64,000 nucleotides of DNA from Penicillus capitatus (Eukaryota > Plantae > Chlorophyta), in assembly GCA_965649825.1 (NCBI GenBank), contig OZ287705.1, forward strand, positions 984,865 through 1,048,864, in the 5' to 3' direction. Positions 4,624-45,699 of this stretch are shown here, piece after piece. Position numbers and translations under genes: made by a program. The notes under the pieces are model-generated. The model had not been told where the DNA came from and did no database searches. It worked only from the letters and a program-made list of their open reading frames with translations. Every line of letters starts with the position of its first letter. Within the stretch, counting starts at the first letter, position 1.

Positions 4624-5345
4624 ACGCGCTCGACGGATTTGGATAACCGACGATCGTATGCGTCCTCGTCAGAGTGCTCATTGTGTTGCTATAATGCTAT
4701 GAGAAGTCATTGAATTTTTGTTAAAGCCAGCGCGGACAAACGTCACATCATATACAACAGCCACGGATACGTTCTTTTGCTAAGTGTTCACGTTTCTCGT
4801 GTGAGTCCCCGAGAAAACTCACAGCGTTTTGTGTGAGCAATCAGAGCGTGTGAGAATTGATCTTTCTGAGAAGGTAGAAAGAACATGACCGTCGGAAAAC
4901 AGTCGCATCATTTTGACCTACCGTTTCGCCCCTCCCGCGTATCGTTCGCATCGGCGTCGTGTCAATCTTTCGCCAAAAACCTCGGTGCTGAGTACAATCG
5001 CCGCGAATTCTTGCCGAGACGCTGTTCATGCGCCTTCGTTTTGACTCTGCGATGCGATGGCCCATTAAAATGATGCATGCTCAACCCTGTGTTCGGTGAC
5101 GGCGCTGTCTCCATGCCTTGAGCGGTGACATTCAATTCCGCGGCGGCGTTCGTTGCGCGACAATGCGTTGAAAAATGTCGCCGTGCAGCTTTGGCGGACA
5201 CGCGGCAACATGCCCCCGCTGAGCTGTCCTGTCGAAATCGATCCTTCACAGTGCTGTACGCGGCGGTTCCTCTGTGCGCCCGTCTTCTTTCATGTTTTCG
5301 CAGAAACTCCGACTGCTAAGAAGGAATACGTTGTTCTAGAGTGCC

Positions 5346-6382
5346 ATGACTGAGATAATAGAAGTCTGCTCCCTTGTGGAAGGAGCGTGGTTCGACGTCG
5401 TCTCTGGGGAATGCTCCATCGCCTGGGTCCTTGGAAAACCACATGTTCGCATTAAATTCATGTTCGGACCGAATGAACACGCGGCCTGTGACTCGGTCGT
5501 TGTACTCTAGGGCGTTTGCTTACAACGAGTGCGAGTATTTTGGTTTCCACCACCTCTTTCAAAAGCGTTTTCGGCATCCTCTAACGTAGAAGGACGACGG
5601 TAAAAGAACGAAGGACGGTATTCCATTTGTTTGTGCGTTTCAGGCTTGTCGAGTTAGACACCCCTTTGGAAATTGGCCAAAAGGTCGTGGGCCTCGCAAA
5701 ATCCGAAAATGAACAAAAGTGGTGAGCGACACCGTTGTCTTGGCCAGTCGCCCGCCTTACGTCTCGTGTACAATTAGGTTTGACGCGTCGATAGAGAAAA
5801 TCGTTCAACGAGATGGTAACGTGCCTTCGGGAGAGCATACATATCAAACTATTGGGCTGTAATACAGGAGACGTTCTCGTTACGGTGGATTGGTGCTTGG
5901 GAATGTACGTTTACGTGTTTGGTACGCCAATTGGAAGAGTCTTATCAGTGGTGAACGGTGATATCGGGTTGCCTTCTGAACCCCTTGATCCTTATACGCA
6001 CCCCGTTATCAGTCAATGGACGCAAGCGTTGTCGGAGCTTTCTGGATTGCAAGAGAAATTCGAGAACAGAGAAGATCGAATTCCTCTCGAGCCTCAACCG
6101 CAACCCGTTTCCAAGATTGCAATGGAACCGATCGAGAAATGGACTCCTGCTTCTCTCTCGGTACGCAAAAGGGCAAGTTTGCGTACAGGAGAGAAAAAAA
6201 CTAAGAAACCGAAGAATAATAAGAATTCTGTACGCGACGAACAATCGGAATCGGTAATGGAACAAAACAGTGCGAGCAAAGATAGTTTTATGGCCTCTGG
6301 AAGTGGTTCCGTGGGCCTTGAATCTGCACAAGTTGGTGATATGCCCATGGGCGACATCGAAAGACTCGAAGTCGTCCCATAA
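5346..6382 (+). CDS. SAWADEE-like tandem-Tudor domain protein with a low-complexity C-terminal tail
   Basis: Splicing GT-AG introns 5462-5510, 5586-5643, 5722-5777 and 5816-5867 gives MTEIIEVCSLVEGAWFDV...VRIKFMAFAYNECEY...KRFR...LEIGQKVVG...KWFDASIEKI...VLVTVDW. This follows the order of SAWADEE motifs (E.R...DGAWYDV, VRVRF.GF..E.DE, GD.V, YDA.V..I). Confidence 0.65.
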
Positions 6383-7160
6383 ATTATCAAACATTTAACC
6401 GCAAGTCTTCTCTCAGTACAGTTCTTTTACGGTTAAGAACAGCAATTCATTTTTTTTTTCTTTTCTTTAGTCGAACTATTGATGGAAGTAAACACTTGTG
6501 GGTATGCATTACGCTTACAACATAAGTAAGATTGACAGTACAAAGCTTTCTGTGGGCAAAGATCCCAACTTGCCGTCGCCCGTTATATAATCGATTCTTT
6601 CTGAAATTAAAAAGTATTCTTTACACGCTGGTTAGTCGTACAGCTCCCGCGAAACCCAATTTCTAATCCAGTGCTTGTTGCCTTTTTATTACTCGAAGCT
6701 CGAGACGCGGCACAATTGGGGTGTTGATGATGTGACCGCCTCCCATTTCCTATGTCTAGTTTTTGACGATTCACAAAAAGCTTTAATCAGTCCTTTGTCT
6801 TTTCAAGCGCCACTGGATTGCAGTCAGTGGATTTTTAAACAGGGCCATTATCATTATCCATCCATACACTATGAGTTCTTGTATCGTCTAACCGATCACG
6901 TATCGTGTCTTTTAGCAAACCTCAACGAAGTTAACAAAAACTCCACGTGTACGTTTTAAGTCGTTGAGAGCCGTAGAAAAATATCAATCTCAAACTTTAG
7001 AGGAACGGAATGGTTGCGAAGGTCGAGTGCGCTCAAGGGTGTGAAGTAATCGTAAGGAAACCTAGGTTTTGTTATCTTAGTCACTTAGCCTTCACTTGAG
7101 TTCAGCGGCGGTCTTACGATTATCGAACACGAAATCAAAGATATTGGAAACGGTGTTACT

Positions 7161-7176
7161 TTGATTTGATTTGATT
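7161..7176. repeat. Short (TTGAT)3 tandem repeat
   Basis: TTGATTTGATTTGATT read directly from the sequence. Confidence 0.8.
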
Positions 7177-42600: not shown

Positions 42601-44086
42601 ACCATGACAAAGCTTCTGGACTTGATGGAGATATACATGAAGTGGAGACGGATGGATGACGGAAGGATGTTTAACTACAGGCGCATTGATGGAGGTTATA
42701 TGCGGTTCGCATTGTGGATGATGCTTCTATGGAATGGAAATGTGATTCAGGGACATCTCTAGAAGAACGTGAGGTGGCGATCCGCGACTTCAATCAACCG
42801 GGATCCGATGTTTTCCTGTTCCTCCTGAGCATTCGAGCTGCCGGTAGGGGACTCAATCTGCAAACGGCTGATACGGTGATCATCTTCGACCCGGATGCCA
42901 ATCCCAAGAACGAAGAACAGGTCCTGTCACATCATGTCACGTCACGTCGGATCCATGCTCGCCCTACAGGCAGTGGCACGTGCTTATCGAATCGGCCAGA
43001 CAAAAGATGTGCTGGTCATTTACCTCGAAACTGTGGCAGATCCATTAAACTATGAAGCGCCTGTCGACGTCAGGCTCTCTCCTCTGCCCATTGCATCCTT
43101 TTTTGATGTGACGTCTCGTTGCAGACTGGCGTTTCATCGGGGAAGATGTATGTCGATTCGATCGAGAGCCTGGTGAGGAAGACGATTCAGAAACAGAAGA
43201 TCGAAATGGCAAACGAAGTCATCGATGCCGGACGGTGCTTAACCATCTCACCGACCATAGCCCTCCACCATCTCCCTTTCTGCCTAGATTCGACATGAAC
43301 ACGACAAACGCTCAGCGAAGACAGACGTTAGAAAACCTGCTGGCAGACGAAGAGCGATTCAAGGTGGCAACCAATCAAGTTCCAGAGCTCAAAGAGATCA
43401 ATCAGCTCATTTCCCGTTCCCCTCAAGAAGTGGAGCTCTTCAATGCGTTGGACGAAAGCGAATGCTGGCCGTACGATCCATTGCTGGAGTGTCCAGAGTG
43501 GATGTTCTTTGACGACGATGACATCATGGAGGCACTCAAAACAACCAGTCGCCATCACATCAAGCGAGAACTGAAGAAACGCGAAGAGGCCGGATGGACA
43601 CCTGTACGCAAACAGGTCACTGTGGATCGCACAGCCGCCAAAGCTCCAGCTGAAAATCTGCGTCTCTTATCTGTGCTTAGATGAAAAGGATGGAAACAAG
43701 TAGTTCGTTGATGGATGCGGAGTCAAAGGATCAGAGCTCCTCACTCGGAGCTGAGGCGATGGACGGGAGAACTATAGAGGACGATGAGGTCGAAGAGATT
43801 TTCACGGCAGAGAATATTAGTGTCGACGAAGCAGGTGGGTGAACAATAGCATCCATAGCATCCTTCCTTACGCACTCTATGTCAAGATTTCAAAGATGAG
43901 GGTGCAAAATTCAGAGGTCCCACAGATGCCGAGGTTCCACAGAAGCCACGATCTCGACTGGATCGTCGGCGTCGCTCAGATATGAGTGTGTTCTATCAAG
44001 CTTCCTGTCTGAAGTACCAAGAGAAAGATTCCAGATCCGGTCTCAAGATACGCATCAAGGGCTTCAAGGGCTTGAAGCGCAGCTAA
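39637..44086 (+). CDS. BRM: SWI2/SNF2 chromatin-remodelling ATPase, BRAHMA-like
   Basis: QLQ domain (FTPDQLTVLRQQILVFRRMK), an HSA-like region, [52 protein letters not shown] and FLLSIRAAGRGLNLQTADTV. Confidence 0.92.
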
Positions 44087-44474
44087 GAGAATTCCTCTAC
44101 CATTCAGAATCTTAAATGAAAGAATGTTATGTGTTCTCCGGACGGTTGTAGATCTGTTTGTACAAGAGCAGGCAGAAATAACAGACAGACAGACAGTTCT
44201 GTGACGGTGTTACAACTGAGTGACGGCTCATGTACATATGCCCACCACCAAGGAAACCATTTCTTCAGCGACAACATCTCTCTTCAGGCCAATTTAGCTT
44301 TACAACCAGCTCTTATCCTCGATCAGATACACAGGCATAATATACAGCTCTCACTTACATCAACATCATAAGTTCACAGGAAGGAGCAACAAAGCTTGTG
44401 TAGGCTGCTAAGATTCTAAACACCACAGTACACGAGCTGACATATGATGTGACAGGTGATGACGGTTTACCTTG

Positions 44475-45485
44475 TTATGAACTGTCGTTGTCTGAGCCGT
44501 CATCTGAGCTGGAAGATAAGAAGGTGTCGTCCTCATCTTCGGAGGGTGCTTTGTTGCTTGTGTCTTCAGACTTTTCAGTTTTCTTTGTCTTTGTTGATGT
44601 CTTTGACTTGCTACTGCCTTGCTTCGCATTGGAGGGATAAAACACGACGTCTTCCTCCTTAGCAAATCGCTGGACGTAATCTACACATCCATACCATCTT
44701 CGCACATACACACGGACGCCGGTAATCCCATACCTTTGACTTTTCCGTTGTACGTCTCGGGCTCTCGCATCAGCAATGAAGCGGCCTCTCCGTTCAATGG
44801 GTCAGTTGGATTGGGATATAGCAGAAGTTGAGGGAGGAACACTTCGAAGACATTTATCAGATCTAGATACCCAAGAAGAGCACATATCGCCCTCGTTCTT
44901 TGATGTGACGTGGATGGGGGCTTACCGAACATAGGGCTCCATGTTTGATTGATAACATCCAGGCAAACAGACCCAGCCCTGCACAAACATACCCTCCATA
45001 CACCAACGCGCGACCATCCACCGTCCTCTCACATTTCATCCACATTCGGATGATAGATCTTGTTGACAAATCCAATGGAGGGCGACTTGTATGGATAGCT
45101 CTCTGGCAATTCCACGTGCACTTTCCAGAACCCTCCCTCGTATGGACCTGATACACAGACACTCTCCTTATTCTGTCTCACATATCGTACGAAACGCGTT
45201 CGATTACTATCGTGGGGTCCTTGAAATAGGACATAGAATTCATTTATGTTGTCTTCCACGATTTCCACTTTCCAGTCCGTCATCATCCTGCAGTCACAAC
45301 AACGTCACCTCGAGTCTCACGCCCGTCGACGTGGCGCGGCGTCGTGTTCGGAGGGTCCACCGAGACGGAGAGAAGTGCATTCGTGTGTTAATGTATGTGT
45401 TCGCGTATGTGGATGAGGGTTACAGTCGCATAACGTCCATTTGGCGTCGTTTGCTCGAGGTCGTGGAGGCAGTGGCACTCGACAT
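44475..45485 (-). CDS. UBC8: Ubiquitin-conjugating enzyme E2, UBC8/UBE2H type
   Basis: [70 protein letters not shown] and an acidic tail. Confidence 0.95.
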
Positions 45486-45699
45486 CTTTGTTCCGGCTCA
45501 ACAGGGAAGAATTGACAGGCACGTCCGCGTGTGTTCGTGCACTTGCTACTCGTGAGAATCGATAAATCTCAATCCACAGCTGACGGTGAAGCCGCTCGGA
45601 AAAATGAAAATGCACGGAATATGTGCTCAATGAAGCGACAGATGATTTGGCCTCGTGATGTGACGCCTGTCGTTCTGGACCTCGTTTTTCCACTTCATC

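What the first reader, a model, noticed from the sequence alone, without database searches (positions are those of the whole stretch)
4740..45666. Recurrent 11-mer TGATGTGACGT concentrated in introns and spacers, in both orientations
Seen: exact copies on either strand at 4740, 15818, 23437, 24063, 28646, 34798, 35597, 39995, 43104 and 44901. Eight fall in inferred introns, one is intergenic and only 28646 is coding. A uniform model expects about 0.03 copies in 64 kb (2x64000/4^11), though the word was chosen post hoc. One-mismatch or 9-mer core copies lie at 6728, 8164, 8898, 9580, 15225, 15775, 40344, 40571, 42926, 44445 and 45656, plus a few in exons. The EDC4 and UBC8 introns share 16 identical nt (CACGTCACATCAAAGA). 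In sense orientation its TGAC often sits 12-19 nt from the 3' splice site, like a branch point. At least six intronic copies are antisense, which a branch point cannot explain. Inference: a DNA-level element (bZIP-like TGACGT core, or a nucleosome/linker signal) or the decayed footprint of an intron-generating element.
Basis: partly seen in the sequence, partly recalled or inferred. Interest (0 to 1): 0.7.

Follow-up and report, generated by a model that had tools for sequence, protein, structure and literature searches.

The report
Sharp nine-base word in algal introns
The nine-base word TGATGTGAC occurs about 20 times more often than chance in this piece of an uncultured green alga's genome, mostly inside its very short introns, and is kept intact by selection; it most likely helps mark the 3' end of those introns, though a role as a protein-binding site on DNA is not excluded.

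Summary
All ten TGATGTGACGT copies sit at the stated coordinates, against 0.04 expected. An unbiased k-mer count shows the core TGATGTGAC is the commonest 9-mer of the window, with 26 copies.

The word is very sharp. Exact copies number 26 against about 1 expected. One-mismatch copies number 28 against about 27 expected.

I built gene models (23 genes, 149 introns, median 53 nt) and checked them against two relatives. The density is 1.5 copies/kb in introns, 0.3/kb between genes and 0.17/kb in exons. All three classes exceed expectation.

A sister species (about 86% identical) keeps 14 of 18 non-coding copies intact, against an 18% background. A more distant relative has introns at the same positions (42 of 43 junctions) but lacks the word. 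The word therefore arose inside old introns and is not a scar of intron-creating elements. No longer repeat surrounds it, and the bZIP ACGT core is not the invariant part.

Sense copies lie 2-18 nt upstream of the 3' splice site, and the next usable AG is the acceptor. Antisense, exonic and promoter copies also exist.

Best reading (about 40%): a lineage-specific pre-mRNA signal in the branch-site/3' splice site region. Main rival (about 30%): a DNA-level binding site.

The parts
4742..4750 (-). Core copy (11-mer class GT), intergenic between two + strand genes, antisense to both
   Evidence: Intact in the sister although large indels flank it.
6728..6736 (+). Core copy between the 3' ends of convergent genes (3' UTR-like)
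   Evidence: The sister has TGATGTGAT.
8164..8172 (+). CGATGTGAC in intron 8151-8210 of a - strand gene; antisense, 14 nt from the 3' splice site
   Evidence: Not conserved in the sister (AATCTGAC).
8897..8905 (-). Core copy 20 nt upstream of the ATG of - strand gene 7399-8877 (divergent promoter or 5' UTR); sense to that gene
   Evidence: Conserved while the flanks diverge. The gene model on the + strand is doubtful here.
9580..9588 (+). Core copy in intron 9556-9606; sense, 18 nt before the acceptor
   Evidence: Conserved.
10199..10207 (-). Core copy in a predicted exon of a + strand gene; antisense
   Evidence: Conserved. An earlier model had placed it in an intron.
15225..15233 (-). Core copy (class AG) in EDC4 intron 15212-15268; sense, 13 nt before the acceptor
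   Evidence: Conserved.
15775..15783 (-). Core copy (TGATGTGACAG|GT) in EDC4 intron 15773-15835; sense, 2 nt before the acceptor
   Evidence: Conserved. It pairs with 15818 in the same intron.
15818..15826 (+). Core copy in the same EDC4 intron; antisense, 9 nt from the donor
   Evidence: The 8-mer is conserved.
23437..23445 (+). Core copy forming the last 9 nt of an exon; the following GT is the predicted donor
   Evidence: Conserved.
24063..24071 (+). Core copy in intron 24031-24088; sense, 17 nt before the acceptor; the only TNAY in the last 40 nt
   Evidence: The distant relative has an intron at this position (42-nt gap).
24251..24259 (+). CGATGTGAC 25 nt after the stop codon of a + strand gene (3' UTR-like)
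   Evidence: The 8-mer is conserved while the flanks diverge.
25744..25752 (-). AGATGTGAC in an exon of the large ATR-like gene; sense
   Evidence: No sister coverage.
28646..28654 (+). Core copy in a coding exon; antisense
30685..30693 (-). Core copy inside the 1679-codon open frame; sense
30949..30957 (-). Core copy inside the 1679-codon open frame; sense
34800..34808 (-). Core copy in intron 34783-34844; sense, 17 nt before the acceptor
   Evidence: The sister has an exact copy at the same distance plus a 10-nt degenerate duplicate upstream.
35599..35607 (-). Core copy in desaturase intron 35570-35619; antisense, 13 nt before the acceptor
   Evidence: Conserved. The intron is shared with the distant relative.
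39894..39902 (-). Core copy in a coding exon of the SNF2 gene (codes PVTSQ); antisense
   Evidence: The peptide RRPVTSQSSYPRLP aligns with the distant relative.
39995..40003 (+). Core copy in intron 39963-40017 (GC donor); sense, 14 nt before the acceptor
   Evidence: Conserved. The distant relative has a 41-nt intron here.
40095..40103 (+). Core copy in a coding exon (GDVT); sense
40344..40352 (+). Core copy (class AGGT) in intron 40321-40366; sense, 14 nt before the acceptor
   Evidence: Conserved.
40571..40579 (+). Core copy in intron 40529-40582; sense, 3 nt before the acceptor (GACTAG|)
   Evidence: Conserved.
42926..42934 (-). Core copy in intron 42921-42969; antisense, 5 nt from the donor
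   Evidence: Conserved. The sister has a tandem second copy.
43104..43112 (+). Core copy in intron 43069-43124; sense, 12 nt before the acceptor; the only TNAY in the last 40 nt
   Evidence: Conserved.
44445..44453 (+). Core copy (class AGGT) between the ends of convergent SNF2 and UBC genes, or in the last UBC intron (model uncertain)
   Evidence: Conserved.
44901..44909 (+). Core copy in UBC intron 44863-44925; antisense, 16 nt from the donor
   Evidence: Lost in the sister (GATGGGAT).
45656..45664 (+). Core copy in a predicted 216-nt intron or upstream region (model uncertain)
   Evidence: Conserved.
51693..51701 (-). CGATGTGAC in the 119-bp divergent promoter between ATGs at 51627 (-) and 51746 (+)
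   Evidence: The 8-mer is conserved next to a 7-nt indel.
53374..53382 (+). AGATGTGAC 11 nt before a TTGTAG acceptor-like site (model uncertain)
   Evidence: Conserved in the sister.
53747..53755 (+). GGATGTGAC in a highly conserved block of uncertain annotation
   Evidence: Conserved in the sister.
59345..59353 (+). Core copy inside the 934-codon WD40 open frame; sense

Best explanation
TGATGTGAC is a lineage-specific cis-element kept by selection, and it acts mainly on the pre-mRNA of this alga's very short, weakly defined introns.

In sense orientation, UGAUGUGAC sits in the branch-site to 3' splice site interval. It offers branch-point-type sequences (UGAC, UGAU; the yUnAy type) and/or a docking site for a branch-site or 3' splice site recognition factor. 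The first usable AG downstream is taken as the acceptor.

It is the sharpest word of a wider intron 'grammar' in this lineage, with a C/A-rich 5' half and a G/U-rich 3' half. Antisense copies follow the mirrored 5'-half composition, and their own function is unknown.

Shown: enrichment, sharpness, conservation, position, the age of the introns, and absence in the distant relative.

Inferred: that the RNA rather than the DNA is read, and that the element acts in branch-site or 3' splice site recognition.
For: Enrichment: 16 copies in 10.4 kb of introns against 0.53 expected from an order-3 Markov model trained on the introns themselves. That is 1.5/kb, against 0.3/kb between genes and 0.17/kb in exons.

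Position: all nine sense copies in introns of 80 nt or less end 2-18 nt before the acceptor (2, 3, 12, 13, 14, 14, 17, 17, 18). The placement test gives p=0.0004 for the maximum and p=0.007 for the mean.

Acceptor choice: in all nine, the acceptor is the first AG after the word, apart from an AG that directly abuts GAC in two cases. In introns 24031-24088 and 43069-43124 the word holds the only TNAY in the last 40 nt.

Selection: 14 of 18 non-coding 9-mers are intact in the sister species against a 17.9% background (p=5e-8). For sense intronic copies the figure is 9 of 10, or 10 of 10 after realigning 34800. Among the five clear antisense intronic copies, the 8-mer core is intact in 3.

Turnover keeps the position. 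At 47017 the window has AAGTGTGATAG| and the sister has GGATGTGACAG|. New sister copies at 35964 and 11582 are also sense and close to the acceptor.

Precedent: the extended branch point GACTGACG of Ostreococcus and of Micromonas IE-C introns shares TGACG with this word.
Against: About one third of non-coding copies are antisense: 7 of 19 intronic by the models. Several are conserved, including 35599, 42926, and the intergenic copy at 4742, which is antisense to both neighbouring genes.

Exons are also enriched (8 copies against 0.61 expected), and so are two divergent promoters (8897, 51693).

Only 18 of 149 introns carry a copy.

One-mismatch variants show no excess: 28 observed against about 27 expected. 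That is unlike a degenerate spliceosomal signal.

The link between orientation and position could be a by-product of the general composition gradient, which is also present in motif-free introns (p=4e-10).

Pairing of the word to the universal U2 GUAGUA box would be poor. This is my own reasoning and was not tested.

The gene models are my own predictions. They were checked against relatives but not against RNA.
Confidence: 0.4

Rival explanations
1. A double-stranded DNA element: the binding site of an abundant sequence-specific protein. Candidates are a general regulatory or architectural factor, or an expression-boosting element of transcribed regions like the plant IME motif. It would be tolerated best in introns because they are the least constrained DNA of a compact genome.
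For: - It occurs in both orientations: 12 sense and 7 antisense in introns, and 6 to 3 in exons.
- It is enriched over expectation in every compartment: introns 16/0.53, exons 8/0.61, intergenic 2/0.08.
- Copies are conserved in a 119-bp divergent promoter (51693), 20 nt upstream of an ATG (8897), and at an intergenic site antisense to both neighbours (4742).
- The word is all-or-none, with exact copies 26 against about 1 expected and one-mismatch copies at chance.
- A plant precedent exists. TTNGATYTG is over-represented in introns and also works from 5' UTR and coding sequence. It shares GAT.TG with this word.
- Five copies contain the TALE-homeodomain site TGACAG[GC]T (the site itself is recalled from memory).
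Against: - Introns are about five times denser than intergenic DNA: 16 in 10.4 kb against 2 in 6.4 kb.
- Sense intronic copies are confined to the last 18 nt before the acceptor.
- Sense copies look better conserved than clear antisense ones: 9-10 of 10 against 3 of 5.
- There is no promoter-proximal bias: 12 of 19 intronic copies lie within 1 kb of the ATG, against 51% of intron bases (p=0.20). Intron rank shows no bias either.
- Copies do not cluster in particular genes (p=0.34).
Confidence: 0.3
2. Inverted copies pair in the pre-mRNA (GUCACAUCA with UGAUGUGAC). The pairing would bring intron ends together or loop out exons.
For: - Intron 15773-15835 carries both arms and forms a 9-bp duplex of -14.3 kcal/mol, which none of 200 shuffles reached.
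- 39894 and 39995 pair in the same way.
- 42926 and 43104 flank a 99-nt exon.
Against: - In 9 of the 13 copies tested, the rest of the intron offered no partner better than shuffled controls. The four that did pair are the two arms of each of the two inverted pairs listed above, and one of those pairs rested on an intron model later rejected, because 39894 is coding.
- Introns as a class are no more structured than shuffles or exons (mean z -0.08 against -0.16, p=0.78).
- My early idea that antisense copies form the donor site was refuted, because 39894 and the GTCACAC at 40302 are coding.
Confidence: 0.05
3. The copies are relics (terminal repeats or footprints) of a mobile element that created or invaded introns (introner or MITE).
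For: - The word falls into two discrete extended classes, TGATGTGACGT (13 copies) and TGATGTGACAG(GT) (8 copies).
- A few pairs are inverted.
- Two introns share a 16-mer.
- The sister species has small duplications that add motif-like copies.
Against: - 42 of 43 testable intron positions are shared with a distant relative that lacks the word. These include six motif-bearing introns, and two more were confirmed by eye.
- No repeat family extends beyond about 27 nt, and the flanks are unrelated.
- Copies are conserved far above background rather than decaying, and there is no halo of one-mismatch relics.
- Most new sister copies arise by point changes.
Confidence: 0.03
4. The word has no function of its own and is a statistical by-product of intron composition or of choosing the word after the fact.
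For: Introns are rich in related words (GATGT, TGTGA, GTGA). They also show a C/A-to-G/T gradient that favours this word in sense orientation near the 3' end.
Against: - It is the top k-mer in an unbiased count.
- It is 30-fold over an order-3 model trained on the introns themselves.
- A compositional effect would raise one-mismatch neighbours too, and they are at chance.
- Conservation is 14 of 18 against an 18% background.
Confidence: 0.02

Closest known systems
Extended branch-point motif GACTGACG of Ostreococcus (introns outside chromosome 2) and of Micromonas RCC299 IE-C introns (PMC2483917, PMC3879977)
   Same: A green-algal, lineage-specific, sharply defined 8-9-nt intron word ending in TGACG. 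It lies on the sense strand upstream of the acceptor. It extends the yUnAy branch-site core.
   Different: In Ostreococcus it is present in 66% of the introns of an intron-poor genome, 20-35 nt from the acceptor, together with a strong donor consensus. Here only about 12% of the introns of an intron-dense region carry the word, and donors are almost information-free. One third of the copies are antisense, and copies also occur in exons and promoters.
Fused branch-site/acceptor motifs with fixed spacing (Yarrowia CTAACAG; Trichomonas and Giardia ACTAACACACAG; PMC2483917)
   Same: Some copies abut the acceptor (TGATGTGACAG| at 15775 and TGATGTGACTAG| at 40571), like a branch site fused to the AG.
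   Different: Those motifs are near-universal in intron-poor genomes. Here most copies lie 12-18 nt from the AG and most introns lack the word.
Short, numerous, weak-signal 'BOC1' introns of Mamiellophyceae outlier chromosomes (PMC3879977, PMC2483917)
   Same: Many introns per gene, each under 75 nt. GT-AG borders with weak donor and no general branch-point consensus. Positions are highly conserved between species.
   Different: BOC1 introns are AT-rich (under 43% GC) and are reported to have no discernible motif. Introns here are 49% GC and carry this word. Best named protein matches are core chlorophytes at 62-75% identity, not Mamiellophyceae.
Plant intron-mediated-enhancement motif TTNGATYTG (bioRxiv 10.1101/269852)
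   Same: A 9-nt word over-represented in introns of a member of the green lineage. It is also active or present in 5' UTR and coding sequence. It shares GAT.TG with this word.
   Different: The sequence does not match: G stands where the motif requires Y. No promoter-proximal bias was found here.
Introner elements and intron-generating DNA transposons (Micromonas IE-A to IE-D; PMC3879977, PMC4540971)
   Same: Repeated sequence shared by many introns of an alga.
   Different: Introners share similarity over their whole length (67-200 nt or more) and sit at lineage-specific positions. Here only 9-13 nt are shared and the introns are old.
bZIP ACGT-core/CRE sites (TGACGTCA) and TALE-homeodomain sites (TGACAGGT), both recalled from memory
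   Same: 13 of 32 copies contain TGACGT. 5 of 32 contain TGACAG[GC]T. The core reads as two tandem TGAY half-sites.
   Different: Neither extension is general, and no copy forms the CRE palindrome. The invariant part, TGATGTGAC, is not either consensus.

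Membership tests
Spliceosomal branch-site / extended branch-point motif | Contains a yUnAy-type sequence with a branch adenosine | tested here: met
   UGAC and UGAU lie within UGAUGUGAC. 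In two introns these are the only TNAY in the last 40 nt.
Spliceosomal branch-site / extended branch-point motif | Lies a short, constrained distance upstream of the acceptor, with no intervening usable AG | tested here: met
   Nine of nine sense copies end 2-18 nt before the acceptor (p=0.0004). The acceptor is the first AG that does not abut the word.
Spliceosomal branch-site / extended branch-point motif | Restricted to the sense strand of introns | tested here: not met
   Introns hold 12 sense and 7 antisense copies. There are also 9 exonic and 4 intergenic copies.
Spliceosomal branch-site / extended branch-point motif | Serves as a consensus for most introns, with graded near-matches | tested here: not met
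   18 of 149 introns carry a copy. One-mismatch copies are at the chance level.
Spliceosomal branch-site / extended branch-point motif | The adenosine forms the lariat | not testable with these tools
   This needs lariat or branch-point sequencing.
Introner / intron-generating transposon | Copies are similar along the whole intron | tested here: not met
   The flanks are unrelated. The longest families around the word are 19-27 nt.
Introner / intron-generating transposon | Introns are recent and absent at orthologous sites in relatives | tested here: not met
   42 of 43 junctions have an intron in the distant relative. These include the motif-bearing introns 24031, 35570, 40529, 42921, 43069 and 44863, plus 39963 and 40321 confirmed by eye.
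Introner / intron-generating transposon | Terminal inverted repeats plus target-site duplication at the intron borders | tested here: inconclusive
   One intron (15773-15835) has inverted copies near both ends. No duplication was seen.
bZIP ACGT-core / CRE site | An ACGT core (TGACGT, ideally TGACGTCA) in the copies | tested here: not met
   GT follows the core in 13 of 32 copies and AG in 8 of 32. TGACGTCA occurs in 0 of 32.
TALE-homeodomain site TGACAG(G/C)T | The octamer is present in the copies | tested here: not met
   It is present in 5 of 32 copies.
Intron-mediated-enhancement motif (TTNGATYTG) | Sequence match | tested here: not met
   GATGTG has G at the Y position. T at -1 is common (26 of 32) but TTN is not general.
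Intron-mediated-enhancement motif (TTNGATYTG) | Enrichment within about 1 kb of the transcription start | tested here: inconclusive
   12 of 19 intronic copies lie within 1 kb of the ATG, against 51% of intron bases (p=0.20). There is no bias by intron rank (p=0.80). Power is low.
Known RNA families (snoRNA, snRNA and others) | Match to an Rfam covariance model | tested here: not met
   No match at gathering score in the window or in 101 kb of related loci.

The most novel reading that the evidence does not exclude
The word is read as double-stranded DNA (or by a guide nucleic acid) by a lineage-specific factor. That factor marks nearly every gene of this alga about once per 2.5 kb, in introns, promoters, UTRs and, where coding allows, exons. 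It would be an all-or-none 9-bp genomic 'punctuation' mark that appeared after the split from a relative with the same introns. One possible role is to organise chromatin or transcription around very short introns.
Probability: 0.3. Interest if true: 0.65.

Novelty: new variant of a known kind. Interest (0 to 1): 0.5.

Why it matters
It is an open question how spliceosomes find 50-nt introns whose donor and branch sites carry almost no information. Here a single exact 9-mer is under clear purifying selection in such introns. It sits where the branch site or 3' splice site factor should bind. It also arose recently inside ancient introns, because a relative has the same introns without it.

That gives a natural before-and-after pair of lineages for studying how a new splicing (or DNA-level) signal is born and spreads. 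It also gives a simple target to mutate.

If the word turns out to be read on DNA instead, it would be an unusually dense and sharp genomic mark in a compact algal genome.

Tried and rejected
1. Antisense copies as the donor site (GT|CACATCA), giving introns with complementary ends. I rejected this because protein alignment with the distant relative shows that 39894, 40095 and the GTCACAC at 40302 are coding.
2. Introns generally folded. Folding z-scores of 125 introns are about 0 and do not differ from exon controls.
3. Each copy having a partner within its intron. This holds only for the copies that belong to inverted pairs; 9 of the 13 copies tested have none.
4. A transposon or introner family. 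No extended repeats were found, and the introns are ancient.
5. An analogous dominant word in the distant relative. None was found. Its top 9-mers are AT-rich with 8-9 copies, and TGATGTGAC occurs once per locus.
6. Clustering in particular genes. Not significant (p=0.34).
7. Promoter-proximal bias. Not significant.
8. Rfam families in the window and in related loci. None were found.
9. A literature search for the sequence itself returned only primers.
10. My first two gene finders were inadequate. The single-strand version chained genes together, and the codon-only version was too insensitive. I replaced them with a two-strand dynamic-programming model, then added sister-species conservation.
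11. The organism could not be named. Best named matches are core chlorophytes (Haematococcus, Tetradesmus and others) at 62-75% identity.

Full report
**Observation**

Dinucleotide shuffles expect 0.04 copies.

I counted every k-mer of the window with the two strands merged. TGATGTGAC is the commonest 9-mer (26 copies), GATGTGAC the commonest 8-mer (32 copies) and TGATGTGACGT the commonest 11-mer. The word therefore stands out without post-hoc choice.

Sequence around the copies is unrelated. No repeat family around them exceeds 19-27 nt.

The invariant part is TGATGTGAC. T precedes GATGTGAC in 26 of 32 copies. After the core come GT (13 copies), AG (8 copies, four of them AGGT) or something else. 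No copy forms TGACGTCA.

The word is all-or-none. There are 26 exact copies against about 1 expected. There are 28 one-mismatch copies, while shuffles give 28.6 for zero plus one mismatch together.

**What the window is**

It is eukaryotic and gene-dense. Pfam finds SNF2, EDC4, CLC channel, WD40, LRR and other domains. Best named protein matches are core chlorophyte green algae and plants at only 62-75% identity.

The window comes from an ENA assembly contig of 274 kb.

Two relatives were retrieved:
- A sister species is colinear with window 3995-25154 and 31076-52306 at about 86-87% nucleotide identity (L001, L004). A third piece, L009, covers roughly window 43-63 kb by its gene content.
- A more distant species has 42% GC and exons 65-76% identical (L002, L007).

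The sister has 26 copies of the 9-mer in 42.5 kb. The distant species has one copy per 21-kb locus, which is chance level, and has no dominant k-mer of its own.

**Gene models**

No eukaryotic gene finder was available, so I wrote a two-strand dynamic-programming model. It uses a 3-periodic Markov coding score and self-trained splice-site matrices. I then added a score for codon substitutions between the window and the sister.

The result is 23 genes and 149 introns, with a median intron of 53 nt (interquartile range 48-62). Introns are 49% GC. Donors carry about 0.1 bit per position beyond GT, and 9 donors are GC.

I then checked the junctions. For 69 junctions I searched the 22 residues on each side separately in the distant species. 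Both sides were found for 43 junctions. In 42 of those, the distant species has a 38-114-nt interruption at the same place (an earlier version is).

The check also corrected me. Copies at 39894 and 40095, and a GTCACAC at 40302 that I had taken for a donor site, are coding. The peptide RRPVTSQSSYPRLP aligns with RRPATTQSSYPRLP in the distant species.

**Where the copies are**

| Compartment | Length | 9-mer copies | Expected (order-3 Markov, trained on that compartment) | Density |
|---|---|---|---|---|
| Introns | 10.4 kb | 16 | 0.53 | 1.5/kb |
| Exons | 47.2 kb | 8 | 0.61 | 0.17/kb |
| Intergenic | 6.4 kb | 2 | 0.08 | 0.3/kb |

By the models, the 32 8-mers split as follows:
- intron sense 12
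- intron antisense 7
- exon sense 6
- exon antisense 3
- intergenic 4

The copies outside coding sequence and clear introns include one in a 119-bp divergent promoter (51693) and one 20 nt upstream of an ATG (8897). Two lie between convergent gene ends (6728, 24251). One is antisense to both neighbouring genes (4742). Eighteen of the 149 introns carry a copy.

Copies are not concentrated in particular genes (p=0.34). They are also not concentrated near gene starts: 12 of 19 lie within 1 kb of the ATG, against 51% of intron bases (p=0.20).

**Selection**

In the 42 kb aligned with the sister, 14 of 18 non-coding 9-mers are perfectly conserved. The background for non-coding 9-mers is 17.9% (p=5e-8). 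In the first 21-kb alignment, the 10 nt on either side of the copies were 79% identical.

Sense intronic copies are conserved in 9 of 10 cases. The tenth, 34800, has an exact copy at the same distance from the acceptor in the sister once a 10-nt degenerate duplication is realigned.

Among the five clear antisense intronic copies, the 8-mer core is intact in 3. The two 8-mers at 53374 and 53747 are also intact in the sister.

Copies found only in the sister arise mostly by point changes at near-cognate sites. At 47017 the window has AAGTGTGATAG| where the sister has GGATGTGACAG|.

**Age**

Six motif-bearing introns (24031, 35570, 40529, 42921, 43069, 44863) sit at positions that are also interrupted in the distant species. 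By eye, 39963 and 40321 do too. The orthologous introns of the distant species lack the word.

The word therefore arose inside pre-existing introns after the two lineages split, or was lost in the other lineage. It is not a scar of intron creation.

**Position and orientation**

The nine sense copies in introns of 80 nt or less end 2, 3, 12, 13, 14, 14, 17, 17 and 18 nt before the acceptor. Under random placement, p=0.0004 for the maximum and p=0.007 for the mean. Antisense copies end 13, 14, 36, 39 and 46 nt before it.

For all nine sense copies, the acceptor is the first AG after the word. The exception is an AG that directly abuts GAC in two cases. In two introns the word holds the only TNAY in the last 40 nt. 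This is what a branch-site or 3' splice site element would look like.

Two cautions apply:
- The 105 motif-free short introns show a strong gradient. The 5' part is 29% C and 22% G. The 3' part is 27% G, 34% T and 19% C (p=4e-10). G/T-rich 5-mers in general sit later in introns than C/A-rich ones. The link between orientation and position could therefore follow from composition.
- TNAY words show no sharp positional peak in motif-free introns.

**Structure**

Introns are no more foldable than shuffles or exon controls (mean z -0.08 against -0.16). Intron 15773-15835, which holds both orientations, gives a 9-bp duplex. So do 39894 and 39995, but 39894 later proved to be coding. A weaker 7-bp match at 40302-40345 also fell, because 40302 is coding too.

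**Interpretation**

The data fit best, though not cleanly, a pre-mRNA element of the branch-site to acceptor interval. The grounds are the intron concentration, the fixed position of sense copies, the rule that the next AG is the acceptor, the better conservation of sense copies, and turnover that keeps the position.

A precedent exists in green algae. The extended branch point GACTGACG occurs in 66% of confirmed Ostreococcus introns outside chromosome 2 and in Micromonas IE-C introns. It shares TGACG with this word.

Several findings speak for recognition of duplex DNA by a specific protein. These are the antisense copies, some of them conserved; the excess in exons and promoters; the presence of the word in only 12% of introns; and the all-or-none sharpness.

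The nearest DNA-level analogue is the plant motif TTNGATYTG. It is enriched in introns and also works from 5' UTR and coding sequence. However, the sequence does not match and no 5' bias is seen here.

I give the RNA reading about 0.4 and the DNA reading about 0.3. Intron-end pairing, transposon relics and compositional artefact each get 0.05 or less.

**Limits**

The gene models are predictions. Only about 64 kb plus orthologous sequence was available, so strand ratios rest on about 30 copies. UTR assignments are guesses, and no RNA data or snRNA genes could be reached.

Noticed in passing
Window-wide, e.g. 16296-16330, 21601, 46994, 53365, 54117, 54598: A second over-represented word family, AAAGAGTGAGA / TCTCACTCTTT, has 17 copies of the 9-mer. 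It is intronic in both orientations. It often lies next to TCACACTT-type words, with which it forms short imperfect hairpins.
   Followed up: partly
Introns window-wide; 47017 for the sister comparison: AAGTGTGA occurs 10 times in sense and once in antisense within introns, so it is strongly strand-specific, unlike TGATGTGAC. At 47017 it occupies the same place as a GGATGTGAC copy in the sister species.
   Followed up: partly
All short introns (105 motif-free introns): Introns have a C/A-rich 5' part and a G/T-rich 3' part (34% T, 27% G, 19% C). A T/G tract therefore replaces the usual polypyrimidine tract before the acceptor.
   Followed up: partly
All 149 predicted donors; 39963 as an example: Donor sites carry about 0.1 bit per position beyond GT. 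Nine predicted donors are GC, for example GCGAGC at 39963, which is conserved in the sister.
   Followed up: partly
23446-23725: This predicted intron sequence is almost invariant between the window and the sister, far above the intron average of 82%. It has no Rfam match. It may be an unrecognised exon or a non-coding RNA.
   Followed up: no
53394-53800: This block is more than 90% identical to the sister, and its annotation is uncertain. My model makes it long introns. In the sister an IspF (YgbB) gene lies just downstream and a 72-aa open frame is called on the - strand.
   Followed up: no
Window ~4700-4750 and ~34796 (sister loci L004, L001): The sister species has a duplication of about 100 nt and another of 10 nt that add motif-like copies (TTTGACGTCGCATCA and TGATGGGACG) next to the conserved exact copies.
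   Followed up: partly
2844, 10428, 28945, 34763, 45776, 52021: TGATGGGAC is the only one-mismatch variant that recurs (6 copies). At 45776 the sister has the exact word. GATGG is also the most over-represented 5-mer of the introns.
   Followed up: no
50415-50525 and 63250-63360: A 111-nt segment is repeated at 75% identity. It lies in two protein-kinase genes, which are probably paralogues.
   Followed up: no
Mid-intron, e.g. introns 7721-7770, 12131-12181, 21056-21109: The word CAGCCATG(A) recurs in the middle of several introns (3 sense, 0 antisense). The numbers are too small to judge.
   Followed up: partly
L004, L005, L006; L003: The sister assembly carries the EDC4 region on three long contigs, which are probably haplotypes or co-assembled strains. 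The window is 99.82% identical, not 100%, to the ENA contig that carries one of its proteins exactly (the 934-residue WD40 protein).
   Followed up: no
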